Positions 2,260 to 61,750 are shown, counted from the stretch's first letter. The stretch: DNA of 64,000 bases from Pecten maximus (GCF_902652985.1 NC_047015.1:7378001-7442000), one strand, 5' to 3'. Translations and numbers: made by a program. Notes: generated by a model from the sequence alone, not told the origin.

Positions 2260-2435
2260 CCGCTTTTGCAAAGTCTGCAAGCTCGTTGACCTCTTCAAAA
2301 TTTAGCGTCGTTAGATTTTGCAGGAACAATGACCATTTGAAGGGAACGATATCAAACGGACTACAGTCCCGACAACTTCCAAGCAGGATGAATTCACCCG
2401 AAGGATTCATCTTGGAATTACAGTTAATCTCACAC
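2260..2435 (-). CDS. REJ module exon
   Basis: (K)CEINCNSKMNPSGEFILLGSCRDCSPFDIVPFKWSL...; acceptor ttgtag|GTGT, donor GCGG|gtaagt; phase 2-1. Confidence 0.88.
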
Positions 2436-5400
2436 CTACAATTGATTTATGCGATGTTTTATATTCAACTGGACTCAACTTTTTATCATATTTATAATTA
2501 CACTAGGCAATTGATGGCTATTAACTTGTATCAAACCAAACTCAGCAAACACTTTAAATATTGTAATATGATGCAATATATATGTATAAGTTTAGACCAA
2601 CTGTGTGTAAGGCAATAGTATCAAGTTTAGACCAACTGTATGCAGGCCAATATTCATCAAGTTTCATCACATTTGACTATATGTAAAATGGTCATAAAAT
2701 GTAAAATTAAATAAACTGCCGACCTGAGAAAAAGTGCTCTTTTTAAAAATGCAATTCATTCTTAAATAATTGCAGGTTATTCTTTAACCTTCTCCTTGAT
2801 ATTTCAATGTCGCGTTCAAAATATATGTATATGTAATAATAAAAAAAATAATTCAAGGTTCTGAGATAATAATATATGCTTAGCCGAAGTTTAATCTAAA
2901 TAGTCCGTAATTTTATGAATATAATATCAGTGATACCTTAATACTTTGGTCTAGTAAACTAAAGTCAGTTTTAACTTACATTGGGGTTATTGTAATACCT
3001 TGGTCTAGTAAACTAAAGTCAGTATTGACTTTCATTAGTGTTACTCTTACACTTCAGTCTAGTAAAATAAAGTCGGTATCAACTTATATAAGTGTTACTT
3101 TAATAGTTCCATGTAATAAACTAAAGTCAGTATCAACTTACATTGGGGTTATTGTAATACCTTGGTCTAGTAAACTAAAGTCAGTTTTAACTTACATTAG
3201 AGTTCTTGTAATACCTTGGTCTAGTAAACTAAAGTCAGTTTTAACTTACATTAGAGTTCTTGTAATACCTTGGTCTAGTAAACTAAAGTCAGTTTTAACT
3301 TACATTGGGGTTATTGTAATACTTTGGTCTAGTAAACTAAAGTCAGTTTGAACTTACATTGGTGTTACTCTTACACTTCAGTCTAGTAAAATAAAGTCAG
3401 TATCAACTTATATTAGTGTTACTCTAATAGTTCCATGTAATAAAATAAAGTTAGTATTAACTTACATTAGTATTACTCTAATACTTTGGTCAAGTATAAT
3501 AAAATCAGTATTAACTTACATTAGAGTTCTTGTAATACTTTGGCCTAGTAAAATAAAGTCAGTATTAACTTATATTAATGTTACGCTATATTTGAAACTA
3601 GTAAAATAAAGTAAGTATTAACTTACATTGGTGTTCTTGTAATACTTCCGTCTATTAAAATAGCGATAGTATCAACTTACTTGATATGTAGCTGCTTAGG
3701 TTCTCCATCTATCACAACTAAAGTTTGTTGGGCAATCGACGTTCGTTCATCCTTCTGTACTACCACTTCAAAAACGTTTTCAGAGTTAGGTTTGAACAGA
3801 AACGAATTCAAAGTAAAGATACCATCTTTTATCTCCAAGTTGCCGATTCCTGTTCCAAAACAGCCCTTTCCCCAAGTCATATTTTGTCGCTGTTCAATAG
3901 TTGGAATCGTCACAGTCGTTGGACTACCACTGGGGAATGTTTCGTGCGAAAGACGACACCTCCATGTAAATGTCAACCCCGTTTTGTTCGTCGCATCGAG
4001 TATGTCCGGGTCGTATGAATCGGACAATGCATCCATTTCAAAATCCGTGTTAAAGCCGATGCTTCGCATAACGCCACCTACAAAGCTGGCCGAAAGCGAT
4101 GTGTTGGTGATATTCAAATACGTGAAGTGGATAGAGGAGAGTCCGTGAATCTCAATCATAGACACGTTTAAAACTATTTTATAATGACCGGCTATGAAGG
4201 TGCTAGGAGGTAATAACATTCTGAAGCGATCAGTATCCACAAGGTCTAAAGGAAATTCGTTAAAGATGTAGTTCAGATACGTTTTACCTTCATCAATCTT
4301 GTAAATTTTCCACTCATAGCTGACTTCATCCGAAGCCTTACAGTTGACTTCTGCTGTGCCCTCGAGAATTATTCTTTCTGATCTATAATGATGGACTGGG
4401 CGGTCAATTTGCTGGTCTCCTCCTTCTATGTTTACCTTAGGATAGAAGCAACTGATCCCAGTGATGATTGCTAAGTCAGTGACCGTCTGAGTTGACACGA
4501 TGTTGAAACCTGTCACATTTACCGTGAATGTACCATTTGTTCTATACATATGTGAATGTTCCAAAACTGCCGTTGGTGACCAATTAACATAATAATATTT
4601 ATTTGTTCTCGCTTCGTCTTCGCACAAACTTTCCCCATATATCGTTTCCTGTGAACCGTCACCCATGTCCCAAACAAAACACGAATCCGTTCCGGGTCGT
4701 GCTAGTTCCATTTTAAACGTGATCGTTTCAAAAGCGTCCGACGGGCCATCGTTACTAATGGTATGGATCTGAACTATCTGCTGCAGAGTGATGATGTCCT
4801 CTGCTGTGTCAGAAAACAGCTGATTGGAAGCGTTCAGTTTGATGTTGTAAGTGCCTGGATTATCAATCTTTCGCCTCATTACTTCATCTGTACTTGTCAA
4901 AGAGACGCCGTCCCCGAACATCAGACCAAAAACTAGATTATTACCGCTGGACACGGATGCGTTTATTATGATATTCCTTTCCAGTGGGAATATGTTACTT
5001 CTGTCACCATGTCCGTAGTTGGGCAGGTCAAATTTATCGGACATAGCATAATATCTCACGAAAGCGAGTCCCTTTACCTCCGTCAATACCCAGATCTCTA
5101 CCTCAGCTGTGGCTGTCGATACTGCGTTTCCAACAGTAAAAGTCACAACGTATAACCCTTTCTGCTGAAAGGTGTGTGTTTTCGATATATGTCTATTGTT
5201 GAATATATCTTGATCTAACGCCCCCGATAGCCCGTAGCCATCTTTGAAAGATATTTCGTATTTGGGATGCGATGCAACACCAATCAAGAAATCAAAATGG
5301 ACTTGACCGTTGACAGGTATATACATCTTGTTTACATGTATTGATAATCCTTCTATTTTTCTTTGAATGCTAATCCAGTTTATCATTAGTACTGAATTTA

Positions 5401-8400
5401 ACTTGTTAGAACAGTTGACAAACATTTCTACATCTCCGACAAGTTCAACGTTATCCCAAGATGTATTCAGGTAAACCGGATTTGTGTTGTCCATAAGTTC
5501 TATGTAAACACTCGAAGAGTAAGTGTTATTCAGAATTGTCAAACACACCATGTGGGATGGTGGGTCCTCACCTCCGATAAACGACAGTTCAGAAGATATG
5601 TTGCCAGGGGGAGACAGCACAAGGGGATTGAGCACTTGAAGAACAATTTCTCTAACGGGATTCTGTACGGAGATGAATTGAGACACCCTGGATTGAGAAG
5701 AGTTGACGTTTTTAGCGGTAACTGTCACGCTGTAGGTACCGACGTCTGAGTAGATGAATGGGAAATGGACAGATGTCTGTCCGCGTCGAATATTGTTTAA
5801 TGATAGGGAAGTATTTTCATTATTTCCGAAATCGACATTAAGTGTCACATTCGATCCTGTTAATGTCCTGATTGTATGGACTATTTCGGTTCCCTTTGTA
5901 ATAACGTATTTACTACTGGACACACTCAATCCAGAAATAGGTTCTTCAATGATGAAATTTTTCTGCGAAATAAGAAAACTCACCATGTTCGATATGTTTA
6001 AAGTGGTCTGAAAAACCCCTGGATTGAAGGTATGACTGAAGGTGAAGTACGAATTGTTTTTCGTGTCACTGACGTATTCGTACAGCGTGTTGCCATCACC
6101 AAACGCACAGTGTATATAGATGTTTGCGAAAGGTATCAAGGACTTGGATGTGATAACGAAGTCAATGTCTCCAGGATAAGACTTGTTTCGCTCTTTACAG
6201 TCCAAGAGGAAACTTCCGATCACGTCTTGGATAAACACTTGATGAGTGAATGTATTCTGGGAATTGATGTTGCTGGCAGAAATGATAACTGTGTAATTCC
6301 CAGAGGCCGAATACCTGAAGAATAAATAACAATCATTACTATTTCATTGTACATGCTCTTCAGAAGATATTATCATACATTATTCACCTACAATATAATA
6401 AAACTGTGGTAATTTTCGATGAATAAAACAAAACTTGCGACTTTGGTATAAGGACAAGAAACAAACACAGCAAATATAATTTTCATGGAAATCGTCAGGA
6501 TGATTATCATATAAATCTAACCTATGGGTCATAGACACTGGTGAAAGGAACGCAAGGTCCTCTGGGTCATCAACAACATCAACTCCTCCATCGCCGTAGT
6601 CAGCAGTGTACCGGACGTGTGATCCCCTCGCCAGTTGTAATGTAAACACCACGGCATCACCCACGCGGTAGAATTTGAATTCAGTGGACACTACAAACCC
6701 TAGGATTGGGTCCTGATTGGTCTCGTCAATGACTTTGAACATAATGGAAAATATCTTATATCAAAATGGGCCTTTACACAGTAGAAATATAATGTCGTAT
6801 ATCCAATACTCATTTACGGGTTACATGTATAAATAAATGTTTGGTAATCAATGTATTCGCTACCTGCACATGTTGAACCCGGAGGTTGACCGTCCTCCAC
6901 GCCTATATCCATGAAGCCGGTGAAGCAGATACAGTGATACACACCTGACGATTGGGTACAGGTGGAGTAAGGAGAACAACTGTTCCACTCCTCACTCTCA
7001 CACTCGTCTACAGCTGTACGGAAAGAAAACAATGATATAAATCGTTCAATGGGGGTTTGCAATCGACTTTGTCACATGCTTAATCACACGTACTATAAGC
7101 GTTATCAAATTTCAAAAAATACCCTTCTGAAATTGTCGGTCAAACACTACACAAGATATACACAACGGTCGGGCTGTATAATCATCGAAAGGCTACCTGA
7201 TACAGAAATGTCTCCGGGAAGGACCTCAAGTCCTTTTGATTGTAAAACAGGGATCCCAACGACAAGAGAGTCCACGATGTCCGTCTCCTGCGCTGTACTG
7301 TCCACGTGGAAATACACCGTGGATATAACAATGATACTTCCCGGAGCATATCTTTCTATAGTTGTTCCAAGGTAATTGCTTTCAAATCCAGTAACCATGA
7401 AAATTTTGGCAACCTGAAATGAAAAGCTTACACGATAAAATTATACCAACCCAAGTTGTCAAGGATTTTGCAATAATCGAAAATATATGAAGATTCAGAG
7501 AAACTTTGACACCCATATTAAATTTCAAAGTGGTTGGCTCTGTAATCGTCCTGATATATATCCTTTCGGGCATGTTGTAACGTTAAAGCGACTATAACTG
7601 TAAAAGTCACGGTTGGAAAATATAATCAGGCATGATATTTTCTATTTTTGCTATATCACAAAGCAAAGACTATTCCTCACATATGAAAATTGAAAGTGTC
7701 GTCAACCATGTTTTGGGAATACCTCTATCTCAACACTCTGCGCAGACTCGTCGCTTTCTCCGCGGAGCATTGTTAACATACATTAACAGGTGTAAACAAT
7801 GGTTTCAGAAACCATCAACATATATGTATACATTGGAGGAACATGTTTTACGGCACGAGCTCGTGTATCGCTATATCTTAAACGGTTAGGCTCGAATATC
7901 GCTATATCTCAAACTAATTTTTCTATCTATCGTTTAATGAGTATGCACTCTTGTTATATATTGGATATAAGCGTAATAGATACCACAGCACCTACCGAGG
8001 AAGTATAAGAGTCTGACATATATGTATGTAACTCAGATTCAGCATCACTCAACTCGTCAGTATAAACTGCTTCACTGTCATTCACTTTTAGTACTCTTAT
8101 TGTGGTGTTGAAGACCCTGGCATCTGTCGAATGTAATAAAAATAGTATGATCTGTATACAATACAATCACGATTATTAGATATGTATACAATGTAATCAT
8201 TATTATATGTAATGTACACAATACAATCATTATCTGTAATATATGCAATGTAATCATTAGTATATGTTCTGGAAACAATGTAATTATTATTATCTGTAAT
8301 GTATACAATGTAATCATTATAATATTATGTATACAATGTTATCATTATGTTCTGCAAACAATGTAATCATTATTATCTGTAATGTATATAATGTAATCAT

Positions 8401-53400: not shown

Positions 53401-56400
53401 TGTTATATCAGGAGTTTGATAGGATGACCTAACGGGTAGGGTTTTATTAGGTACATTAACCATTTCAATGGTCCTTGTCATTGAAGATTTCGTCAGAAAT
53501 TCTTCATCGGCAGAGATCACGCGTCCTGAACAGAAGGGGTGGTTCATCTTGTTCATATGTAGTACAGATCAATTGTGAATGACAGGTTAGGGGCAGAAGT
53601 GTGTAAAACATTCCACGTCATATTGCCCTGTTACAGTCCTAGACTGTACAGCTATTATCATAGGCTTACCTGCTGACTGCGTCTCGATTCCGGAATATGT
53701 CGAGTAAGGTGCAATTACTGTAGACGTGGTAGGTACAGCTGTTGTAGTAGCCGTGGTAGGTACAGTTGTTGTAGGCGCCGTGGTAGGTACAGTTGTTGTA
53801 GTAGCCGTGGTAGGTACAGTTGTTGTAGGAGCCGTGGTAGGTACAGTTGTTGTAGGCGCCGTGGTAGGTACAGTTGTTGTTCGAGCCGTGGTAGGTACAG
53901 TTGTTGTAGGAGCCGTGGTAGGTACAGTTGTTGTAGGAGCCGTGGTAGGTACAGTTGTTGTAGGAGCCGTGGTAGGTACAGTTGTTGTAGGCGCCGTGGT
54001 AGGTACAGTTGTTGTAGGCGCCGTGGTAGGTACAGTTGTTGTAGGCGCCGTGGTAGGTACAGTTGTTGTAGTAGCCGTGGTAGGTACAGTTGTTGTAGGA
54101 GCCGTGGTAGGTACAGTTGTTGTAGTAGCCGTGGTAGGTACAGTTGTTGTAGGAGCCGTGGTAGGTACAGTTGTTGTAGGCGCCGTGGTAGGTACAGTTG
54201 TTGTAGGCGCCGTGGTAGGTACAGTTGTTGTAGGAGCCGTGGTAGGTACAGTTGTTGTAGGCGCCGTGGTAGGTACAGTTGTTGTTCGAGCCGTGGTAGG
54301 TACAGTTGTTGTAGGAGCCGTGGTAGGTACAGTTGTTGTAGGAGCCGTGGTAGGTACAGTTGTTGTAGGAGCCGTGGTAGGTACAGTTGTTGTAGGCGCC
54401 GTGGTAGGTACAGTTGTTGTAGGCGCCGTGGTAGGTACAGTTGTTGTAGGCGCCGTGGTATATACAGTTGTTGTAGTAGCCGTGGTAGGTACAGTTGTTG
54501 TAGGAGCCGTGGTAGGTACAGTTGTTGTAGTAGCCGTGGTAGGTACAGTTGTTGTAGGAGCCGTGGTAGGTACAGTTGTTGTAGGCGCCGTGGTAGGTAC
54601 AGTTGTTGTAGGCGCCGTGGTAGGTACAGTTGTTGTAGGCGCCGTGGTAGGTACAGTTGTTGTAGGCGCCGTGGTAGGTACAATTATTGTAGGCGCCGTG
54701 GTAGGTACAGTTGTTGTAGGCGCCGTGGTAGGTACAGTTGTTGTAGGCGCCGTGGTAGGTACAGTTGTTGTAGGCGCCGTGGTAGGTACAATTATTGTAG
54801 GCGCCGTGGTAGGTACAGTTGTTGTAAGAGCCATGGTAGGTACAGTTGTTGTAGGCGACGTGGTTGGTACAGTTATTGTAGGCGCCGTGGTTGGTACAGT
54901 TATTGTAGGCGCCGTGGTAGGTAGAGTTGTTGTAGGAGCCGTGGTTGGTACAGTTATTGTAGGCGCCGTGGTAGTTGTTGGTTCAGTAGTTGTTGGTTCA
55001 GTAGTTGTTGGTTCTGTAGTTGTCGGTTCTATAGTTGCTGGTTGTGTAGTTGTTGGTTGTGTAGTGGTTGGTTGTGTAGTGGTTGGTTCTGTAGTTGTTG
55101 GTTCTGTAGTTGTTGGTTGTGTAGTTGTCGGTTCTGTAGTTGTTGGTTCTGTAGTTGTTGGTTGTGTAGTTGTCGGTTCTGTAGTTGTCGGTTGTGTAGT
55201 TGTTGGTTCTGTAGTTGTTGGTTCTGTAGTTGCTGTTCCTTCAGTTATTGGTTCTGTAGTTTTCGGTCCTGTAGTTGTCGGTTCTATAGTTGTTGGTTCT
55301 GTAGTTGTTGGTTCTGTAGTTTTCGTCCCTGTAGTTGTCGGTTCTATAGTTGTCGGTTCTATAGTTGTTGGTTCTATAGTTGTTGGTTCTGTAGTTGTCG
55401 GTTCTGTAGTTGTTGGTTCTATATTTGTTGGTTCTGTGGTTGTCGTTTCTATAGTTGTTGGTTCTATAGTTGTTGGTTCTGTAGTTGTTGGTTCTGTAGT
55501 TGCTGTTCCTTCAGTTATTGGTTCTGTAGTTTTCGGTCCTGTAGTTGTCGGTTCTATAGTTGTTGGTTCTGTAGTTGTTGGTTCTGTAGTTTTCGTCCCT
55601 GTAGTTGTCGGTTCTATAGTTGTCGGTTCTATAGTTGTTGGTTCTATAGTTGTTGGTTCTGTAGTTGTCGGTTCTGTAGTTGTTGGTTCTATATTTGTTG
55701 GTTCTGTGGTTGTCGTTTCTGTAGTTGTTGGTTCTATAGTTGTCGTTTTTATAGTTGTCGGTTCTATATTTGTCGTTTCTATAGTTGTTGGTTCTGTAGT
55801 TGTCGGTTCTGTAGTTGTCGGTTCTGTAGTTGTCGGTTCTATATTTGTTGTTTCTGTAGTTGTCGGGTCTATAGTTGTCGTTTTTATAGTTGTCGGTTCT
55901 ATATTTGTTGTTTCTGTAGTTGTCGGTTCTATAGTTGTCGTTTTTAGTTCTGTAGTTGTCGGTTCTGTAGTTGTCGGTTCTATATTTGTTGTTTCTGTAG
56001 TTGTCGGGTCTATAGTTGTCGATTCTATATTTGTTGTTTCTGTAGTTGTCGGGTCTATAGTTGTCGGTTCTATATTTGTTGTTTCTGTAGTTGTCGGTTC
56101 TGTAGTTGTTGGTTCTGTAGTTGTCGGGTCTATAGTTGTCGGTTCTATATTTGTTGTTTCTGTAGTGGTTGGTTGTGTAGTTGTTGGTTCTATAGTTGTT
56201 GGTTCTGTAGTTGTAGGTTCTGTAGTTGTCGGTTCTGTAGTTGTAGGTTCTGTAGTTGTCGTTTCTATAGTTGTTGGTTCTGTAGTTGTCGGCTCTGTAG
56301 TTGTTGGTTCTGTAGTTGTCTGTTCTATAGTTGTCGGTTCTGTAGTTGTTGGTTCTATAGTTTTTGGTTCTGTAGTTGTTGGTTCTGTAGTTGTCGATTC

Positions 56401-59400
56401 TATAGTTGTTGGTTCTGTAGTTGTCGGTTCTGTAGTTGTCGGTTCTGTAGTTGTCGGTTCTATAGTTGTTGGTTGTGTAGTTGTTGGTTCTGTAGTGGTT
56501 GGTTGTGTAGTTGTTGGTTGTGTAGTTGTTGGTTGTGTAGTGGTTGGTTCTGTAGTGGTTGGTTGTGTAGTGGTTGGTTGTGTAGTGGTTGGTTGTGTAG
56601 TTGTTGGTTGTGTAGTTGTTGGTTTGTGTAGTGGTTGGTTCTGTAGTTGTCGGTTCTATAGTTGTCGGTTGTGTAGTTGTCGGTTCTATAGTTGCTGGTT
56701 CTGTAGTTGTTGGTTCTGTAGTTGTTGGGTCTATAGTTGTCAGTTCTATAGTTGTCGGGTCTATAGTTGTTGGTTCTATAGTTGCTGGTTCTGTAGTTGT
56801 TGGTTCTGTAGTTGTTGGTTCTGTAGTTGTTGGGTCTATAGTTGTCGGTTCTGTAGTTGTCGTGTCTATAGTTGTCGGTTCTGTAGTTGTTGGGGTGCTC
56901 GTAGTTTGGTTTGGAATTGTCGGTTCTTAGTTGTTGGTTCGTATTGTGGTTCTGTTTGTCGGTTCTGTATTTGTTGTTATGTTTGGTTGTAGTTGTTGGT
57001 TCTTTTATTTGTGTTGTCTATAGTTGTCGTTCTGTATTGGTTGGTTTGTAGTTGTGGTTCTATAATTTTGGTTCTTAGTTTTTCTAGTTGTCGGGTTAGT
57101 TTTTCGTTCTTAGTTGTGGTTTGGTGTTTCGGTTCTTGTTTTTGGTTCTTAGTTTGGTCTTAGTTGTCGTTCTTGTTGTGGGTCTTAGTTGTCGGTTCTG
57201 TAGTTGTGGTTCTTATTGCGGTTCTATGTTGTTGGTTCTGTAGTTGGTTTGGTTGTGGTTTTTGGGTCTAGTTGTTGTGTTCAGTTTGGTTCTATAGTTT
57301 TGGTTCGGTGGTTTTTAGTTGTTGGTTCTTAGTTGTTGTTGTTAGTTGTTGGTTCTAGTTGTTGGTTTTATTTGGTTTCTATAGTTGTCGGTCTTATTTT
57401 CTGTTGGGTTTTAGTTTTTGGGTTTTCTGTAGTTGTTGGTTCTGTATTGGTTGTTTTGTTCTTAGTTGTTGGTTTTATTATGTGTGGTTGTATTAGTTTG
57501 TGTTGTGTTCTGTGTTGTGGTTTTTTTGGTTGTGTATGTTGGTTTTAGTGGGTTCTTGTTGTTTCTTAGTGGGTCGTTTTTGGGGGTTTTGGGGTATTGT
57601 TGGTTTTTTAGTTGTGGTTCTATTGTGGTTGTTGGTGTTCTGTATTTTGTTGGTTGTGTTGTTGGTTGTGTAGTTGTTGGTTGTGTAGTGGTTGGTTGTG
57701 TAGTGGTTGGTTCTGTTGTGGTTGGTTGTGTAGTGGTTGGTTTTGTGGTTGTTGGTTGTGTTGTGTAGTTGTTGGTTGTGTAGTGGTTTGGGTTGGGGGT
57801 TTATTTGGTTGTTGTTTTGGGTATTGTTGGTTGGTAGTTGTGTAGTGGTGTTGGTGTGGTTGGTTGTTGTAGTTTTGGTTTTAGTTGGGTTTTTGGTGGT
57901 TGGTTGTTGTAGCTGTTGTTTGGTTGTTGGTTGTTTGTGGTTGTGTAGTGTTGGTTTGTGTGTTTTTTCGGTTGTGGGGTTGTGTACGTTGTTGGTTGGT
58001 GTTTTTGGGTTGGTTGTGTGGTTGTGTTGGTTGTTGTAGTGGTTTGGTTGTGGTGTAATTGTTTGGGTTTGTGTCTTGTGGTTCTGTGTTTGTTGTGTAG
58101 TGGTTGGTTGTGTAGTTGTTGGTTGTGCAGTGGTTGGTTGTGTAGTTGTTGGTTGTGTAGTGGTTGTTTGTTGTTGGGTTGTTGTTGTGTTGGTTGGTTT
58201 GTAAGGTTTTTGGTTGTTGTTTGTGGTTGGTGTGGTTGGTGTGTGTTTTGGGTTGTGTGTGGTTGGTGGTTTGTTGGTGTGTGTGGTGTTTGTGTAGTGT
58301 TGGTTGTGTAGGGTTGTTTGGGTTGTTGTTGTTGTTGGTGAAGGGGGTTGGTTTGTGGGTTGGTGTGTAGGTGGTTTGGGGTTTTTGTTGTTTTGGTGGG
58401 TTTGTTGGTTCGTGGTTTGGTTGTTTTCGTGGTCTGTTGTGGTGAGTTGGGCTTTTGGGTTGTGTAGTGGTGGTTGTGTAGTGGTTGGTTTGTTGTGTTT
58501 GTAGTTGTTGTGTTGTGGTTGGTTGTGTTAGTGTTGTTGTTGTTTTGGTTGGGGTTGCGTTCTGCCTTGTCGGTCTGTGTTGTTGGTTTTGGTTTGTTGT
58601 GTTGTTGTTGTGGTTGTGTTGGTTTGGTTTGTAGTTGTTGGTTGTGTGTTTGTTGTGTGGGGTTTGGGGTTTTTGGTTTGTGGTGTGTTGGTTGGTGGTG
58701 TGGTTGGTTCTGTGTGGCGAGTTGTGGGGTTGTGGGTAGTGTGTGGTTGTGTAGTGGTTGGTTGTGTCGGTGTTGGTTGTGAGTGTGTTGTTTGGTGAAA
58801 GGTTGGTTGATTGGGGTGTGTGGTGGGTTGGGGTTGTGGGGGTGTAGTTTGTTGGGTCGTTGTTGGGTTGTGGGAGTTGTTGGGTGGTATTTGTTGGTTG
58901 GGGAGTTGTGGTTGTGTAGTGTGGGGGTCGGGTTGTGGTTGGGTTGTTTTGTGATTTTGGTGTTGTGTCTTTTGTTTGTCCCCGTTGTTGGGTTGTTACG
59001 GGTTTTGGTTGGTTTTTCTTTGTGGTTTTTTTGTGTAGGGTTGGTTGGTTAGTTGTGGTTGTGCAGTGGGGGTTTGTGTGAGTTGTTGTTTTGTGGTTGT
59101 TGTTGTGGCGGGGGTTTGGTTGGGTGGGTCTTTGGGGTTTGGGTGTGTGGGGTGTGTTTTGGGGTTGGTTGGGTTTTGGGTTGGTGGTTTTTGGTTTGTT
59201 TGTGGTTTGGGTGTTGGTTGTGTGTTGTTGGGGTGGTGGGTGGTTTGTATGTTGTGGTTGTGTCGTGGTGGTTGGTGGGGTGGGTTGGTTGTGTGTGGTT
59301 GGTTTGTGTGGTTGGTTGTGTAGTGGTTGGGTTGTGTGTTGTTGGTTTGGGGTTGGTTTTGGTTGTTGTGTCGTTGCGGGTGGGGGGGTTGGTTGTTGTT

Positions 59401-61750
59401 GTTTTTTTGGGCTTGTATGGTTGGTGTGCTGGTTGGTTTTGTTGGGGTTACGTGGTTGGGGTTGTGTGTGGTTGGTTGTGTGGGTTGGTGTTTTGTTGTG
59501 GTTGTGGGTTGTGGGTGTGTGTTTTGGGATTGTGTCTGTTGGGTTTGTGTTTTGTTGTTTGTTAGTTTGATTGTTTGTTTTGGTTGGAGTTTTTGTTGGT
59601 GGGTTGGGTTGTGTGTTGGGTTGGGGGTGTTGGTTGTGTGTTTGGTTGTGGATTGTTGGTTGTGTAGTGGTTGGTTGTGTTGGTTGTGTGTTGTTGTTTT
59701 TTTTGGGGTTGTTGTGTAGTTGTTGTTTGTGTAAAGGTTGGTTGTTGTAAAGGGGTTTTGGTTGGTTGTTGTTGGGTTGTGTAGTGGTGGTTGTTGGTTG
59801 TTGGTTGTGTGGGATGGGTTGTTGTTTGTGGTTGTTGTTGTGGTGGTTTTTTTGTCTTGTTTTTGGTTGTGTGTGGGGGTTGTTTTTGTTGGTGTGTGGT
59901 GGTGGTGTCGTTGTTGGTTGGTAGTTTGTTGGGTTGATGTTGGTTTTGTTGTTGGTGGGGTTTGGGTTTTTGTGTTGTTGGTTGTGTAGTTGTGGTTTTG
60001 GGGTTGGGGTTTAGTGGTTGTTGTGTGTTGTGGGTGTGTTTTGGTCTGATTTTTGTGTATGGTTTTGTGTTGTGGTTTGGTTTGTGTAGTTGTCGGTTTT
60101 GTCGGTCTGTTTTTGGTTTTGGTTGCGGTTGTAGTTTTTCTGTTCTGCCCGGGGTTTGTTTTTTGTGTTTTTTGGGTTAGTTGTCGGCTTGTTGTGTTGT
60201 GGTGGGGTTGGTTTGTAGTTGTGTTTGTATTGGTTGGTGTGTATTTGGTTGTGTAGTGGTTTGTTTGGGGAGTTGTTGTGTGGGTTGGTTGGTTATGGTT
60301 GGTTGTTAGTTTGGTTGGTGTGTAGGGGTTGGGTGTGTAGTTGGTTGGCTAGTAGTGGTTGGGTTGAGGGTTGTTTGTTGGGTTGTTGTAGTTGTCGGCT
60401 TGGGTTGGGGTTTGGTTGTGTAGGGGTTGGTTGTAGTGTTGTTGTGTGGGGTTTGGGTTGTTGGTTGGTTTTATCGTGGTTGGTTTGTAGTGTTGGTTGT
60501 GTATTGTTGGCTCTTTTAGTTGGTTGGTAGGGGTTGGTTGTGTTGTTTTTGTGTTTTGTGGCTGGGGTAGTGGTTGGTTGTGTGTGTTGTTGTGAGTTTG
60601 TTGGTTGTGGTTGGTTGTAGTTGTTGTTGGGGTGGTTTGGGCTTGTTTTGGCTGGTTGTGTTGTTGTTTGTGTAGGTGGTTGGTTTTGGGTGGTTGGTAG
60701 TTGTTGGCTTTTTGTGGTTGGTTCTGGCTGTTGGTTTCGTAGTTTGTTGTGTTGTGGTCGTAGTGGTGGGCTTCTTTTGTGGTTGTCTGTAGTGGCCGTA
60801 TAGGGTTTGGTTGTGTTGGGTGGTTGGAGTGTTGGTTTTTGGGGGAATGGGTTTGGGGAAAAGTGGTTTGTGTAGGGGGTTTTTGGGTTAGTGTTGGTTG
60901 TTGGTTTGTTTGGTTGTTGGTAGGGTGGTGTGGGGGTGGGGCCCTTGGCGTGGTCTGGTTGTGATCTGTAGGTTGTTTGGTTTTTGTTTGGTTGGTGTTT
61001 TTGTGTTTGTGTGGTGTTGGTTGGGTTTTAGGGGGCTTTGTGGTGGATTTATTTGTTTGTGTGGTTGGTTGGTTGTGTTGTTGTGGTTGTTTGGGGTGGG
61101 GTTTGGTTGTTGTTGGCCCGTGTGGTGGATGAGTGGTTGGATTTGTAGGGGTTTGGGTTGGTGTGTTGTTTTAGGGTTGTTTTTAGTGGTGGTTGTGTAT
61201 TGTTGGTTGGTTAGTGGTTGGTTAGTGTGGTTGTGTGGGGTTTGGTTGTGTAGTTTGGTTGTGTGTGGTGTTTGTGGTGGTTGGTTGTTTGTGTTGGTTT
61301 TGTGTGTGGTTTGGGTTGTAGTGGTTGTTTGTGTAGTGGTTGGTTGTGTAGTGGTTGGTTGTGTAGTTGTTGGTTGTGTAGTGGTTGGTTGTGTAGTGGT
61401 TGGTTGTGTAGTTGTTGGTTCTGTTATTGTCGGTTCCCCAGTTACAGGCTCGATTGTTAAGGATACCGGCGTTGATGATATTATCTTCGTTGTTTTTACT
61501 TCTATAGTCGTTGTTTGTTTTGTCGGTGATTCCGATGTTGTTGCGGGAGTCGTTGTTTGTTCCAATGATACCTCGTGTGCGACCGTTGTTGGCGTTGTTG
61601 ATAAGTTCGTTGATGTAGATCCTGCTTGCATAGATGCTATTGTAGCTGACTGAATCGATGTTGCGAATGGTGTTGAGGGGTTGGTTGATACTGTGCTAGC
61701 CAGTGTATCATCTGTCGTTGGTGTTATGCTATCCGCATCGCCTACTTGTC
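2260..61750 (-). CDS. Partial multi-exon gene: giant mucin-SEA-EGF(11)-SEA-EGF-PKD(~7)-REJ protein (polycystin-1/REJ family); both ends outside the window
   Basis: Chain of GT-AG exons with compatible phases traced by hand. PKD motifs (WDMGDG, DYGDG, MFGDG; HxYxxxGxYxVxVxxxNxxS), REJ motifs (SDSYDPD, FTWRC, GCFG, CEINC..NPS..LGSCRDC), cbEGF D(I/V)(N/D)EC motifs and SEA PGS(I) motifs. Confidence 0.9.
2940..3680. repeat. 54-bp minisatellite (~14 units) abutting the PKD/REJ exon donor
   Basis: Unit ctagtaaactaaagtcagttttaacttacattggggttattgtaataccttggt. Confidence 0.9.
3681..6314 (-). CDS. Large exon: PKD domain array and start of REJ module
   Basis: 2634 bp, open, phase 2-2; repeated PKD cores, then SCFYPKV...VNC...YEWKIY...SDSYDPD...FTWRC...GCFG. 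Confidence 0.93.
6522..6732 (-). CDS. First PKD domain exon
   Basis: Acceptor gttcaaag|TCATT (phase 1); encodes VRYTADYGDG; donor CATAG|gttaga (phase 2). Confidence 0.85.
6864..7013 (-). CDS. Calcium-binding EGF exon after SEA2
   Basis: AVDECESEEWNSCSPYSTCTQSSGVYHCICFTGFMDIGVEDGQPPGSTCA; 150 bp. Confidence 0.88.
7197..7413 (-). CDS. SEA domain 2 C-terminal exon
   Basis: VAKIFMVTGFESNYLGTTIERYAPGSIIVISTVYF...; phase 0-1. Confidence 0.85.
7996..8123 (-). CDS. SEA domain 2 N-terminal exon
   Basis: DARVFNTTIRVLKVNDSEAVYTDELSDAESELHTYMSDSYTSS; phase 1-0; donor TCG|gtaggt. Confidence 0.85.
8140..8830. repeat. AT-rich degenerate ~30-bp minisatellite
   Basis: Units resembling tgtatacaatgtaatcattattatctgtaa. 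Confidence 0.8.
9232..9351 (-). CDS. Calcium-binding EGF exon
   Basis: DIDECKSNPCPSHSKCWNNQGNYACACEKGFYQKTPYECL; 120 bp. Confidence 0.9.
10178..10294 (-). CDS. Calcium-binding EGF exon
   Basis: DINECLWSPCMEFATCENSVGSYRCSCLPGFTMDGNTCV; 117 bp. Confidence 0.9.
10554..10679 (-). CDS. Calcium-binding EGF exon
   Basis: DINECNVDPSPCPSHSVCDNTAGSYMCTCVGGYVMVDDRSCE; 126 bp. Confidence 0.9.
10737..11195. mobile_element. Non-autonomous hairpin element: 170-bp palindrome plus 14-bp inverted repeat pair
   Basis: Palindrome 10737-10906; tttctaccacaata (10908-10921) pairs with tattgtggtagaaa (11182-11195). Confidence 0.65.
11694..11832. repeat. Long inverted repeat with a branched (T-shaped) apex
   Basis: Arms ttgaactgtttttgtatggtatttataatctatttgaatgccaa and ttggcattcaaatagatcataaataccatacaaaagcagttcaa. 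Confidence 0.8.
11989..12105 (-). CDS. Calcium-binding EGF exon
   Basis: DIDECMYGLCPPNANCTNIPGSYTCTCQTGYIDIGTMCE; 117 bp. Confidence 0.9.
12162..12815. repeat. 24/28-bp minisatellite
   Basis: Unit cactgaggta(ggta)gggagtaaataata. Confidence 0.92.
12827..15157. repeat. 38-bp minisatellite (~60 copies) made of an EGF exon 3' end plus its splice donor
   Basis: Minus-strand unit caacatcaataacacctgtaaag|gtaagtactatacac. Confidence 0.93.
15130..15246 (-). CDS. Calcium-binding EGF exon
   Basis: DTNECLTGVCGVNADCLNTKGSYQCSCKIGYTAINNNCE; 117 bp; donor GAAG|gtaagt. Confidence 0.9.
15533..15652 (-). CDS. Calcium-binding EGF exon
   Basis: [40 protein letters not shown]; 120 bp; donor GAAG|gtcggt. Confidence 0.88.
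15838..15960 (-). CDS. Calcium-binding EGF exon
   Basis: DINECDADPTPCPSNSDCVNIDGGHVCVCLTGYNKVDATCE; 123 bp. Confidence 0.9.
16189..16305 (-). CDS. Calcium-binding EGF exon
   Basis: DRDECLSFPCPGNAHCNNTDGSYNCTCFDGFISIGNTCE; 117 bp. Confidence 0.9.
17013..17129 (-). CDS. Calcium-binding EGF exon
   Basis: DINECLEGPCGDHALCYNSPGSYQCVCHPGYLMVSGGCK; 117 bp. Confidence 0.9.
17279..17398 (-). CDS. Calcium-binding EGF exon
   Basis: DVNECLAASTCPYHSDCINTEGSFTCQCKSGFVVTTEGCE; 120 bp. Confidence 0.9.
17647..17829 (-). CDS. Linker plus EGF-like domain 1
   Basis: CALKPCTGNAVCHVVQGTAICRCELGYFYNLTGCT; 183 bp, phase 1-1. Confidence 0.88.
17880..18125. repeat. 54-bp tandem repeat (~4.5 copies)
   Basis: Unit tgacatcagagttccataaaactaagtctgaccgacagaaaggtaaaacaaaaa. 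Confidence 0.9.
18226..18371 (-). CDS. SEA domain 1 C-terminal exon (SPGSIKVDYEV...)
   Basis: Acceptor tttactag|TCCAGGC, donor CTAG|gtatgt; PGS(I)xV motif. Confidence 0.85.
18469..18533 (-). CDS. SEA domain 1 middle exon (IMQLYRGAHFPGIISITFVKF)
   Basis: Acceptor cctttcag|ATT, donor TTTTC|gtaagt; 65 bp, phase 0-2, joins both flanking exons in frame. Confidence 0.8.
19082..19503 (-). CDS. End of mucin stalk and N-terminal part of SEA domain 1
   Basis: NAGNAG acceptor ttttcagcag; encodes QYLSSIALVADWDEAYEDPNSVEYRDLMHAVLAF; donor TTT|gtaagt (phase 0). Confidence 0.85.
19757..23206 (-). CDS. Mucin exon E (3450 bp): 36-bp TTLGDEPSTTTI repeats and 63-bp SSGDEPSTVSITTHGDHPSST repeats
   Basis: Lies within ORF 19698-23306; acceptor ttttttctag|CATCA, donor TCAG|gtaatg; phase 1-1. 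Confidence 0.85.
23334..23552 (-). mobile_element. Full-length tRNA-derived SINE with V-domain core
   Basis: Minus strand: GGGCCGCGGTGGCCGAGTGATTAAG (A box), GTTCGAAACC (B box), GGTTTTTCTCCGGGTACTCCGGCTTTCCTCCAC (V-SINE core), AAAC tail; direct repeat ccgttctatac at 23323-23333 and 23551-23561. Confidence 0.85.
24871..25023 (-). CDS. Short Ser/Thr-rich exon (51 codons)
   Basis: Acceptor tttttcag|TCAGT, donor ACCG|gtaagt; 153 bp, open, phase 1-1. Confidence 0.8.
25179..28527 (-). CDS. Mucin exon D (3.35 kb): PET-type repeats, then acidic 10-aa TTEATSTEPV-type repeats; one +1 frameshift near 27562
   Basis: Acceptor ttccccag|GAACAACT and donor GAAA|gtaagt; ORFs 27464-28462 and 25156-27303; length 3349 = 3n+1, matching a single extra base. 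Confidence 0.8.
28772..29422 (-). pseudogene. Degenerate mucin exon paralogue
   Basis: Acceptor ccccaag|GAACAACTAGT; PET/STT coding sequence broken at homopolymer runs (~29070, ~29135); weak donor TTTG|gtcatg. Confidence 0.55.
29744..35232 (-). CDS. Mucin exon C (~5.5 kb), 48-bp VPETTTTPVPSTTTTT repeats; contains frameshifts
   Basis: Acceptor ttccccag|GAACAACT and donor GATG|gtaagc; ORFs 32531-35269 and 29628-31001; indels near 32881 and 31220-31490. Confidence 0.7.
35428..35927 (-). pseudogene. Degenerate mucin exon paralogue
   Basis: Acceptor ccccaag|GAACAACT and donor GTCG|gtatgt; in-frame TAA at 35605-35607 and 35518-35520; 500 bp, not a multiple of 3. Confidence 0.6.
36200..36663 (-). 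pseudogene. Dead mucin exon paralogue
   Basis: Acceptor ccttcag|GAACAGCT resembles neighbouring exon starts; CCG-TAA stop at 36626-36628, followed by frameshifts; 3' boundary approximate. Confidence 0.55.
36877..47304 (-). CDS. Mucin exon B (10,428 bp, 3476 codons, uninterrupted): 51-bp SSVQITDSSTDTQTTLG repeats and 48/39-bp VPETTTTPVLSTT(STT) repeats
   Basis: Lies within ORF 36749-47311; acceptor ttttttgtggcag|GTTCA, donor GATG|gtaagc; length divisible by 3; phase 1-1. Confidence 0.88.
47612..48992. repeat. 30/31-bp minisatellite (~45 copies)
   Basis: Unit tagttgtgaactgtgtaggttagcatgttg. Confidence 0.92.
50037..50423. mobile_element. Non-autonomous hairpin element: 109-bp palindrome plus 13-bp inverted repeat pair
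   Basis: Palindrome 50037-50145; tttatcctgcaac (50178-50190) pairs with gttgcaggataaa (50411-50423). Confidence 0.62.
50476..50660 (-). mobile_element. 5'-truncated V-domain SINE (second family)
   Basis: Minus strand: GTTCGATTCC B box, GGGTTTTCCCCGGGTACTCCGGTTTCCTCCCC core, AATAAAGTTT tail. Confidence 0.78.
51540..52224. repeat. 30-bp minisatellite
   Basis: Unit gacctagatatgtatgacgggtgtcgtcgt. Confidence 0.9.
52221..53247. repeat. 30-bp minisatellite; one minus-strand frame reads NPTTQTSHTT
   Basis: Unit gggtttgttgtatgtgacgtctgtgttgtt. Confidence 0.9.
53670..61750 (-). CDS. Mucin exon A (~8.1 kb): unique start GQVGDADSITPTT, 15-bp (Q/E)PTT(T/I) repeats, then 30-bp TTVPTTAPTT repeats
   Basis: Acceptor tctgaag|GACAA at 61751/61750; donor GCAG|gtaagc at 53670/53669; phase 1-1. 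The middle (~56900-61330) is degraded. Confidence 0.75.
56900..61330. other. Degraded G/T low-complexity tract inside mucin exon A
   Basis: Almost only G and T, with recognisable remnants of ggttgtgtagtggtt. Confidence 0.8.

What the first reader, a model, noticed from the sequence alone, without database searches (positions are those of the whole stretch)
2260..61750. Giant mucin-polycystin: ~10,000-aa PTS stalk, 2 SEA and 12 EGF domains ahead of PKD/REJ
Seen: one phase-compatible exon chain joins ~31 kb of Thr/Ser/Pro repeat exons to SEA, EGF x11, SEA, EGF, PKD x~7 and REJ. Known: PKD+REJ defines the polycystin-1/sea-urchin REJ family, and PTS+SEA+EGF is the architecture of membrane mucins. 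LOV-1 and PKD1L3 carry Ser/Thr-rich regions, but I know of no family member with a stalk this long plus SEA and cbEGF arrays. Inference: a micron-scale glycosylated antenna coupled to a polycystin receptor or channel partner, for example for mucus or flow sensing, adhesion or gamete recognition.
Basis: partly seen in the sequence, partly recalled or inferred. Interest (0 to 1): 0.88.

Follow-up and report, generated by a model that had tools for sequence, protein, structure and literature searches.

The report
Scallop polycystin with giant mucin stalk
A king-scallop gene of the polycystin-1 (kidney-disease receptor) family carries, ahead of its usual sensor and channel parts, two SEA domains, twelve EGF domains and probably several thousand residues of mucin-like stalk; other molluscs' predicted proteins share this build and I found no paper describing it, but no RNA evidence could be obtained that the whole stalk is in one transcript.

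Summary
The window is Pecten maximus chromosome sequence and the gene lies on the minus strand.

**Confirmed**
There are PTS exons, SEA1 (three exons), 11 one-exon EGF modules (10 calcium-binding), SEA2 (two exons) and EGF12. About seven PKD repeats and REJ follow.
- Downstream of the window come the rest of REJ, a GPS motif (HL/T), PLAT, 11 hydrophobic segments, the polycystin (TOP) domain and PKD_channel.
- The link from the EGF array through SEA2 to PKD/REJ is solid. Three scallop and three gastropod RefSeq models are colinear with it.
- Gastropod models also carry SEA1 and up to about 3,200 residues of Ser/Thr-rich sequence.

**Not confirmed**
- The full ~10,000-aa stalk is not shown to be one transcript.
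- About 28 kb is PTS-like, and several exons have strong phase-1 splice sites, including one of 10,428 nt.
- The assembly has three uncompensated 1-nt frame shifts and one compensated pair inside the arrays.
- About 4 kb is 91-97% A+C, so its open frames show nothing.
- No signal-peptide exon was found.

The architecture already sits, unnamed, in databases for other molluscs, and I found no paper on it. Earlier scan notes cover other scallop mucin-stalk receptors and one other polycystin, not this build.

Verdict: a new variant of a known kind, of moderate interest.

The parts
61201..61750 (-). Most upstream PTS exon in the window. Its acceptor at 61750 is phase 1. It runs into the A/C-only tract.
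57500..61400 (-). Degenerate 15-nt repeat tract, 91-97% A+C on the minus strand. All frames are nearly stop-free, so neither coding status nor frame can be determined.
53670..56910 (-). PTS exon or exons (15-nt and 27-nt arrays, Thr about 51%). There is a strong phase-1 donor at 53670 and a 1-nt frame switch at about 56,640.
52261..52740 (-). PTS-like 30-nt array. Exon boundaries are unresolved.
36877..47304 (-). Giant PTS exon of 10,428 nt (3,476 codons, divisible by 3). It is phase 1 at both ends and holds about 200 copies of a 48-nt unit.
31516..35232 (-). PTS exon paralogous to the giant exon (81% DNA identity). There is a 1-nt frame switch at about 32,890 and the 3' boundary is unresolved.
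29744..31216 (-). PTS exon with a strong phase-1 donor at 29744. The 5' boundary is approximate.
25179..28527 (-). PTS exon, phase 1 at both ends. Its length is +1 nt because of a frame switch at about 27,560.
24871..25023 (-). Small Ser/Thr-rich exon of 51 codons, phase 1-1.
19757..23206 (-). Last large PTS exon (3,450 nt; 36-nt and 63-nt arrays). It contains a compensated out-of-frame stretch of about 270 nt.
18226..19503 (-). SEA1 in three exons (19503-19082, 18533-18469, 18371-18226). About 100 PTS residues precede it in the first exon. It has a G/SIKV motif.
9232..17829 (-). EGF1 to EGF11, one exon each, phase 1-1, 6 Cys each. Ten have the D-x-[DN]-E-C calcium-binding signature.
7197..8123 (-). 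SEA2 in two exons (8123-7996, 7413-7197) with a G/SIIV motif.
7723..7770 (-). Alternative first coding exon used by the RefSeq model XP_033743898. It lies inside the SEA2 intron and encodes no signal peptide.
6864..7013 (-). EGF12.
6522..6732 (-). First half of the first PKD repeat.
3681..6314 (-). Large exon holding the remaining PKD repeats and the first 209 positions of REJ.
2260..2435 (-). REJ continuation exon. The gene continues below coordinate 1 to about -24,824.
12827..15157 (-). Intron-start tandem array of the EGF7 exon end plus its 5' splice site (61 units, 48 GGTAAGT).
2939..3680 (-). Intron-start tandem array directly after the 3681 donor (14 units, 10 GTAAGT).

Best explanation
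**What it is.** One very large polycystin-1-family gene of Pecten maximus lies on the minus strand. It spans at least 86 kb, from window 61,750 to about -24,824.

**Product, N to C**
- A mucin-like Pro/Thr/Ser stalk, at least about 100 aa and probably several thousand.
- SEA1, 11 EGF modules (10 calcium-binding), SEA2 and EGF12.
- About 7 PKD repeats, REJ and a GAIN/GPS region with the HL/T site.
- TM1, PLAT and TM2-11 with the polycystin (TOP) and PKD_channel domains.

**Shown:** the domains, their order, the exon phases, and colinearity with orthologue models.

**Inferred mechanism**
- The heavily O-glycosylated stalk projects the N-terminus up to about 2 micrometres from the membrane.
- Pull or shear on it passes through two force-sensitive, probably self-cleaving SEA modules, a calcium-stiffened EGF rod and the PKD/REJ chain to the GPS site.
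- As in polycystin-1 and adhesion GPCRs, this would control the 11-TM receptor/channel subunit, probably together with a PKD2-type partner.

The RefSeq model (3,006 aa, starting in the SEA2 intron) and the other scallop models are truncated at the N-terminus.
For: **Domains**
- The GPS motif and 11 hydrophobic segments are.

**Exon structure**
- All EGF exons and the well-defined PTS exons are phase 1-1.
- SEA2 is split across the point where RefSeq XP_033743898 starts.

**Orthologues**
- Models from Argopecten, Ylistrum and Mizuhopecten read straight through EGF, SEA2, EGF and PKD, and map exon by exon onto the window.
- Ylistrum, Gigantopelta and Haliotis asinina models add PTS and SEA1. Pfam SEA scores 63.8 and 54.6 bits in the two gastropods.
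- The H. rufescens model has about 2,300 residues, mostly Ser/Thr/Pro-rich, ahead of SEA1.
- None of the seven models starts with a signal peptide, so all look incomplete at the 5' end.

**Link to the PTS exons**
- The SEA1 exon has a stop just upstream of its acceptor and no ATG before the SEA fold.
- The PTS arrays have periods divisible by 3.
- They include a 3,528-codon stop-free stretch.
- Unit-to-unit changes favour codon position 3 in the PTS frame, with pN/pS 0.57-0.63 in three arrays.
- The 48-nt array matches strongly only within this locus; other chromosomes give weak (about 65-70%) matches.
Against:
- The RefSeq annotation of this very genome separates the PKD/REJ part from everything upstream.
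- Three uncompensated 1-nt frame switches lie inside PTS arrays.
- About 4 kb is A/C-only sequence with no assignable frame.
- No signal-peptide exon was found in 60 kb upstream.
- No database protein of 110-350 aa or 2,044-6,503 aa from this species contains SEA1.
- The junction 19757>19503 is supported only by splice consensus and phase.
- The pN/pS signal is modest and is absent in the 27-nt array.
Confidence: 0.6

Rival explanations
1. **Same gene, much shorter stalk.** Only some PTS exons are used, because of alternative splicing, exon skipping or partly dead arrays. The mature protein would then carry hundreds to a few thousand PTS residues, not about 10,000.
For: - Frame switches lie at about 56,640, 32,890 and 27,560.
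- The A/C-only 4 kb has no frame.
- Several exon boundaries are unresolved.
- The longest orthologue model has about 3,200 Ser/Thr-rich residues.
- Phase 1-1 exons can be skipped freely.
Against: - The frame switches are single-nucleotide events inside near-identical repeats. The assembly was built from PacBio CLR reads with wtdbg2 and polished, which is error-prone in such arrays (PMC7191990).
- The 10.4-kb exon is intact and has strong splice sites.
- The orthologue models are all truncated at the N-terminus, so their stalk lengths are lower bounds.
Confidence: 0.3
2. **Two genes.** A separate secreted mucin would be encoded by the PTS exons and end at the stop at about 19,700. The polycystin gene's true first exon would be small and undetected.
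For: - Reading through the 19757 donor reaches a stop after 19 codons.
- RefSeq splits the locus.
- There is no RNA evidence for 19757>19503.
Against: - Only 253 nt separate the last PTS exon from the SEA1 exon.
- The SEA1 exon starts in phase 1, with PTS sequence and no ATG.
- No signal-peptide-like exon was found in that interval or upstream.
- Gastropod and Ylistrum models place PTS directly before SEA1.
Confidence: 0.15
3. **Short isoform.** The main product would be the RefSeq-type protein from an internal promoter, with its first exon at 7770-7723. It would lack the mucin, SEA1 and EGF parts. The upstream exons would belong to a different or defunct unit.
For: RefSeq XP_033743898 begins with this exon spliced to 7413.
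Against: - That start gives no signal peptide and only the second half of a SEA fold. This is implausible for an 11-TM protein with a large ectodomain.
- Three other scallop models read through SEA2a into SEA2b without this exon.
Confidence: 0.08

Closest known systems
Polycystin-1 family (human PKD1, PKD1L1-3, PKDREJ; sea-urchin SpREJ1-10; C. elegans LOV-1)
   Same: - PKD repeats, REJ and GPS with the HL/T site.
- TM1, PLAT and 11 TM segments, with the polycystin/TOP and PKD_channel domains as in PKD1L2/L3 and PKDREJ.
- RefSeq names the scallop model 'PKD1-like 2'.
   Different: - The ectodomain head is a PTS stalk, two SEA domains and 12 EGF modules. It is not LRR/WSC/C-type lectin/LDL-A (PKD1) or lectin domains (SpREJ).
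- SpREJ1 has a single EGF, and no SEA or mucin domain is listed for the ten SpREJ or five human proteins (PMC1934368).
- From my own knowledge, LOV-1 has a Ser/Thr-rich N-terminal region but no SEA or cbEGF array.
Unnamed molluscan orthologues in RefSeq: Haliotis rufescens XP_048238653 (6,593 aa), H. asinina XP_067671591, Gigantopelta aegis XP_041362676, Ylistrum balloti XP_060067155, Argopecten irradians XP_069125477, Mizuhopecten yessoensis XP_021359195
   Same: - The same order: PTS, SEA, (Ser-rich), cbEGF array, SEA, EGF, PKD, REJ, GPS, PLAT, channel.
- The scallop models are 67-79% identical and colinear with the window's exons.
   Different: - All are automatic predictions, lack a signal peptide, and are cut at different points at the 5' end.
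- The longest has about 3,200 Ser/Thr-rich residues, against up to about 9,000 possible here.
- Gastropods have an extra Ser-rich block between SEA1 and the EGF array.
SEA-type membrane mucins (MUC1, MUC16; MUC3/12/13/17 with an EGF-SEA-EGF cassette)
   Same: - Long tandem-repeat PTS domain encoded by giant exons.
- SEA with a G/S-[IV]-x-V motif.
- A membrane-proximal EGF-SEA-EGF arrangement (comparison from my own knowledge).
   Different: The single-pass anchor and short tail are replaced by a PKD/REJ/GAIN ectodomain and an 11-TM polycystin body.
EGF-TM7 adhesion GPCRs (ADGRE/CD97, EMR) and SEA-bearing ADGRF/ADGRG members
   Same: - cbEGF array, Ser/Thr-rich stalk and GPS autoproteolysis site ahead of the membrane.
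- The Mya arenaria relative is auto-named 'AGRE1-like'.
   Different: No 7-TM secretin-like domain. The membrane part is 11-TM polycystin with PLAT and a channel domain.

Membership tests
Polycystin-1 / REJ (PKD1) family | REJ domain | tested here: met
   - Pfam REJ scores 106.7 bits in exon 3681-6314.
- It continues in 2260-2435 and in two downstream exons at 32.1 and 58 bits.
Polycystin-1 / REJ (PKD1) family | PKD (Ig-like) repeats before REJ | tested here: met
   - Pfam PKD scores 89.3 bits with 4 stretches, plus a split first repeat.
- The AlphaFold2 model is all-beta with pLDDT 84.8 and about 7 units by my reading of the strand pattern.
Polycystin-1 / REJ (PKD1) family | GPS motif with HL/T cleavage site just before TM1 | tested here: met
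   - Pfam GPS scores 22.8 bits on the downstream exon.
- The C-x-C-N-H-L-T-S-F-G motif lies about 30 residues before the first hydrophobic segment.
- Cleavage itself was not tested.
Polycystin-1 / REJ (PKD1) family | PLAT domain after TM1 and 11 transmembrane segments | tested here: met
   - PLAT scores 26.3 bits.
- A crude hydropathy scan of the same-locus RefSeq protein gives 11 separate peaks after GPS.
Polycystin-1 / REJ (PKD1) family | Polycystin (TOP) domain and PKD_channel in the last six TM segments (PKD1L2/L3/REJ subtype) | tested here: met
   Polycystin_dom scores 108.4 bits, PKD_channel 119.4 bits and Ion_trans 42.9 bits.
SEA-type membrane mucins | Long tandem-repeat Pro/Thr/Ser domain | tested here: met
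   - Arrays have periods of 15 to 156 nt, all divisible by 3.
- Thr+Ser+Pro is 50-73% over about 28 kb.
- Glycosylation was not tested.
SEA-type membrane mucins | SEA domain with G/SVVV-type site | tested here: met
   - SEA1 and SEA2 exons match orthologue SEA profiles.
- The orthologue SEA1 passes Pfam, and SEA2 versus SEA1 gives hhalign probability 95.6%.
- The motifs are G-S-I-K-V and G-S-I-I-V.
- Cleavage was not tested.
SEA-type membrane mucins | Single-pass membrane anchor with a short cytoplasmic tail after SEA/EGF | tested here: not met
   EGF12 is followed by PKD, REJ, GPS and 11 TM. The gene therefore resembles a membrane mucin in its outer part but is not a member.
EGF-TM7 adhesion GPCRs | Secretin-like 7-TM domain after GPS | tested here: not met
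   No 7tm_2 hit appears in any exon or in the orthologue models. PLAT and PKD_channel are found instead.

The most novel reading that the evidence does not exclude
All PTS exons, and perhaps the SEA-like exons 16-23 kb further upstream, are spliced into one mRNA. It would encode a protein of about 13,000-15,000 aa with three SEA domains and a stalk of about 2 micrometres. That would be the largest polycystin known and comparable in length to MUC16. It would make a mollusc-wide class of mucin-tethered polycystin mechanosensors whose long-range pull is read out at SEA and GPS cleavage sites.
Probability: 0.3. Interest if true: 0.75.

Novelty: new variant of a known kind. Interest (0 to 1): 0.55.

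Why it matters
- How polycystin-1 proteins are activated is still debated, in particular whether force on the ectodomain exposes the GPS-tethered stalk.
- A natural polycystin would be a ready-made test case if its ectodomain is a micrometre-scale mucin tether with two more force-labile autoproteolytic modules (SEA) and a calcium-stiffened EGF rod.
- The finding links three receptor designs usually treated separately: membrane mucins, EGF-TM7 adhesion GPCRs and polycystins.
- It shows that current annotations of this gene are truncated at the N-terminus in all seven mollusc models I examined.

Tried and rejected
- **RNA evidence.** I did not try further.
- **Homologue searches for the upstream model.**
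  - The SEA1 exon found nothing among proteins of 110-350 aa.
  - The SEA1 region of the Ylistrum protein found only itself among proteins of 2,044-6,503 aa.
  - How RefSeq annotates the stalk in P. maximus therefore remains unknown.
- **Pfam on single SEA exons** gave no hit because the domain is split. SEA was instead established through orthologue proteins and exon-wise profile searches.
- **Signal-peptide scans** of 61.7-124 kb upstream found nothing convincing.
  - A repeated M...LFSFILVYMSSVG|GTAAGT unit at about 88-92 kb was considered as a first exon.
  - I left it open because it is a tandem satellite.
- **TM-exon scan** between 62 and 100 kb found none.
- **Oyster 'polycystin' shell-formation paper** (PMC12677090) is not about this family. 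It describes EF-hand (EFh) domains in its protein and mentions no REJ, SEA or PKD domain.
- **ORFs in 57.5-61.4 kb** were rejected as evidence of coding.

Full report
**Origin**

- The window is G000:C1:7,378,001-7,442,000 of an assembly of 918,306,378 bp in 3,983 scaffolds, with a 60,076,705-bp contig.
- These figures are exactly those of the Pecten maximus assembly (PMC7191990).
- A RefSeq protein of P. maximus from a contig of that length maps onto the locus at about 93-100% identity over most exons.
- The strong G/T excess on the plus strand and all coding-looking sequence place the gene on the minus strand.

**Polycystin part**

- Exon 3681-6314 gives Pfam REJ (106.7 bits, profile positions 4-209 of 452) and PKD (89.3 bits, 4 stretches).
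- The preceding exon, 6732-6522, carries the first half of another PKD repeat.
- Exon 2435-2260 continues REJ.
- An AlphaFold2 model of the 888-aa exon, built with 14 homologues, is all-beta (mean pLDDT 84.8).
- I fetched 40 kb downstream. There I found further REJ exons, GPS (with the C-x-C-N-H-L-T-S-F-G site), PLAT, Polycystin_dom, PKD_channel and Ion_trans.
- The same-locus RefSeq protein shows 11 hydropathy peaks after GPS.
- The gene ends at about window coordinate -24,824.
They do follow.

**EGF and SEA part**

- Twelve exons each encode one six-cysteine EGF module. All are multiples of 3 nt and phase 1-1.
  - Ten have the calcium-binding D-x-[DN]-E-C start and pass Pfam EGF_CA.
  - EGF1 does not.
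  - EGF12 has the motif but scores below the EGF_CA cut-off (23.3 against 27 bits).
- SEA domains are split by introns, so single exons give no Pfam hit.
- Four lines of evidence establish them instead.
  1. Orthologue proteins contain the uninterrupted domains. SEA1 passes Pfam in Haliotis asinina and Gigantopelta (63.8 and 54.6 bits). SEA2 scores 21 bits in Argopecten, below the cut-off.
  2. A profile of seven orthologous SEA2 segments matches a profile of four SEA1 segments. hhalign gives probability 95.6% and E 1e-8 over 88 columns.
  3. These profiles were searched against all 3,340 stop-free segments of 164 kb around the locus. They pick out exactly the window's SEA exons: 18152-18475 at E 4e-15, 18923-19525 at 3.5e-7, 7150-7440 at 3e-26 and 7957-8166 at 5e-15.
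  4. Reading the DNA showed that SEA1 has a third, 65-nt middle exon (18533-18469). It has a clean acceptor and a GTAAGT donor, its phases (0 then 2) fit both neighbours, and its product aligns to the Ylistrum protein.
- Both SEA domains keep the G-S-[I]-x-V signature of self-cleaving SEA modules.

**Is EGF/SEA joined to PKD/REJ?**

- Yes, with high confidence.
- RefSeq models of Argopecten irradians (3,362 aa), Ylistrum balloti (3,716 aa) and Mizuhopecten yessoensis (3,385 aa) run EGF array, SEA2, EGF, PKD, REJ, GPS, PLAT and channel.
- They map exon by exon onto the window in the order 17,396 ... 9,212, 8,124, 7,428, 7,017, 6,733, 6,325 ....
- The P. maximus RefSeq model (XP_033743898, 3,006 aa) differs. 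It starts with a 16-codon exon at 7770-7723, inside the SEA2 intron, spliced to 7413.
- That start gives half a SEA domain and no signal peptide, so I take it for a truncated model or at most a minor internal start.

**The mucin part**

- About 28 kb (about 9,400 codons) between 61,750 and 19,230 reads as at least 40% Thr+Ser+Pro in some stop-free frame.
- Evidence that much of it is real coding sequence:
  - Array periods are 15, 27, 30, 36, 48, 51, 63, 96, 120, 144 and 156 nt, all divisible by 3.
  - One stop-free stretch spans 3,528 codons.
  - Strong phase-1 acceptors and donors bound exons 47304-36877 (10,428 nt), about 31216-29744, 25023-24871 and 23206-19757. All of these have lengths divisible by 3.
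  - Several exons begin with the same '...P-[QG]-G|T-T' junction and end with '...D-G|GTAAG'. This shows duplication of exon-plus-intron units with the phase kept.
  - Between neighbouring repeat units, changes concentrate at codon position 3 of the PTS frame. pN/pS is 0.57-0.63, the lowest of the three frames in three arrays. The 27-nt array does not show this.
  - The 48-nt array matches strongly only within this locus; other chromosomes give weak (about 65-70%) matches.
- Evidence that limits the claim:
  - The PTS frame jumps by one nucleotide inside arrays at about 56,640, 32,890 and 27,560. It leaves and re-enters frame at about 22,680/22,410.
  - Exons 35232-31635 and 28527-25179 are each one nucleotide too long.
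  - In 57.5-61.4 kb the minus strand is 91-97% A+C. Stop codons are then almost impossible, and no single frame stays open throughout. The roughly 1,300 'codons' there are unverifiable.
  - The assembly was built from PacBio CLR reads with wtdbg2 and then polished. Single-base indels in near-identical repeats are therefore plausible errors, but I cannot show that they are.

**Is the stalk joined to the polycystin?**

- The SEA1 exon starts in phase 1 at 19,503 and opens with about 100 PTS residues.
- It has a stop codon just upstream of its acceptor and no ATG before the fold. It cannot be a first coding exon.
- The last big PTS exon ends 253 nt upstream, at a phase-1 CAG|GTAATG donor.
- No signal-peptide-like or TM-like exon was found anywhere upstream on this strand.
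- Orthologues agree.
  - Ylistrum has about 80 PTS residues before SEA1, behind a spurious transposase-derived start.
  - Gigantopelta has about 450 residues before SEA1, about 400 of them PTS.
  - H. rufescens has about 2,300 residues before SEA1 and about 3,200 Ser/Thr-rich residues in all.
- None of the seven mollusc models begins with a signal peptide, and each is cut at a different place. This is what one expects if gene predictors fail on a huge repetitive 5' region.
- A prawn relative has about 2,300 PTS residues directly before PKD/REJ.
- A mucin-like N-terminus on this polycystin is therefore very likely (about 0.9). That several thousand residues belong to it is likely (about 0.6-0.65). 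That all ~9,000-10,000 do is open (about 0.3-0.4).

**Further upstream**

- At extended coordinates 78,09x-77,925 there is an exon with a clean acceptor and a phase-1 GTAAGT donor.
- It encodes a G-S-I-V-V... segment. This is the third-best hit of both SEA profiles (E 0.03-0.04) and aligns to their C-terminal halves.
- An exon at about 84,640-84,272 weakly fits the N-terminal half (E 1.9).
- Its donor phase fits the 61,750 acceptor, and no TM exon lies between them.
- The gene may therefore start more than 23 kb upstream of the window and have a third SEA domain. This is a lead, not a finding.

**Mechanism**

- Inference from established properties of the parts:
  - PTS stalks are extended by O-glycans.
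  - SEA and GPS are autoproteolytic, non-covalently held modules that respond to force.
  - cbEGF arrays are calcium-stiffened rods.
  - PKD repeats are mechanically stable.
  - Polycystin-1 proteins pair with PKD2-type channels.
- The most economical reading is a tethered mechanosensor or adhesion sensor.
- Nothing here bears on tissue, ligand or gamete recognition.

**Novelty**

- The architecture exists as automatic, mostly 'uncharacterized' RefSeq predictions in bivalves and gastropods.
- Among the 150 best representatives of the PKD/REJ exon, only molluscan entries combine it with cbEGF arrays.
- Five full-text literature searches found no description.
- The sea-urchin and human family survey lists no SEA or mucin domain.
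- I class it as a new variant of a known kind. The likely gain is correct full-length models and a natural system for testing force activation of polycystins.

Noticed in passing
window 12827-15157; window 2939-3680; L003 7761-9920 (about window -12,240 to -10,080): Three introns of this gene begin with tandem arrays that copy the exon's last bases plus its 5' splice site. There are 61 units of 38 nt (48 GGTAAGT), 14 units of 54 nt (10 GTAAGT) and about 28 units of 77 nt (19 GTAAGT), where fewer than 1 is expected by chance. The third array also copies the GAIN-strand exon just before GPS, and the RefSeq protein matches it repeatedly at 57-71% identity.
   Followed up: partly
L007 3925-4090 and L008 about 272-640 (extended window coordinates 77,925-78,09x and 84,272-84,640), minus strand: Two exons with clean splice sites encode the C-terminal (G-S-I-V-V...) and possibly the N-terminal half of a third SEA-like domain. 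The first has a phase-1 donor that fits the 61,750 acceptor. The upstream exon contains an R-A-R-R/S furin-like site.
   Followed up: partly
L008-L009, extended coordinates about 88,200-91,900: A 66-nt tandem array. On the minus strand each unit reads ...LFSFILVYMSSVG followed by TAG|GTAAGT in phase 1. It may be another amplified exon-end-plus-donor array, conceivably derived from a signal-peptide exon.
   Followed up: no
window 7723-7770: The RefSeq model of this gene starts at a 16-codon exon inside the SEA2 intron. An in-frame stop lies 4 codons upstream of its ATG. It is either an annotation artefact or an internal promoter.
   Followed up: partly
window 32243-35113 versus 36877-47304: The two largest PTS arrays are 78-81% identical at DNA level. 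Several PTS exons share the same acceptor and donor contexts, which points to growth of the stalk by duplication of exon-plus-intron units.
   Followed up: partly
window 47601-48992 and 51540-52225: Two 30-nt tandem arrays lie between PTS exons and are not Thr/Ser/Pro-rich in any frame, although one reads H-N-Y-N-M-L-T-Y-T-V. They are probably intronic minisatellites.
   Followed up: no
Ylistrum balloti XP_060067155 (P0158) residues 1-100: The orthologue model begins with a Tc1/mariner transposase fragment fused in frame to the PTS/SEA1 exon. This is a clear annotation artefact.
   Followed up: no
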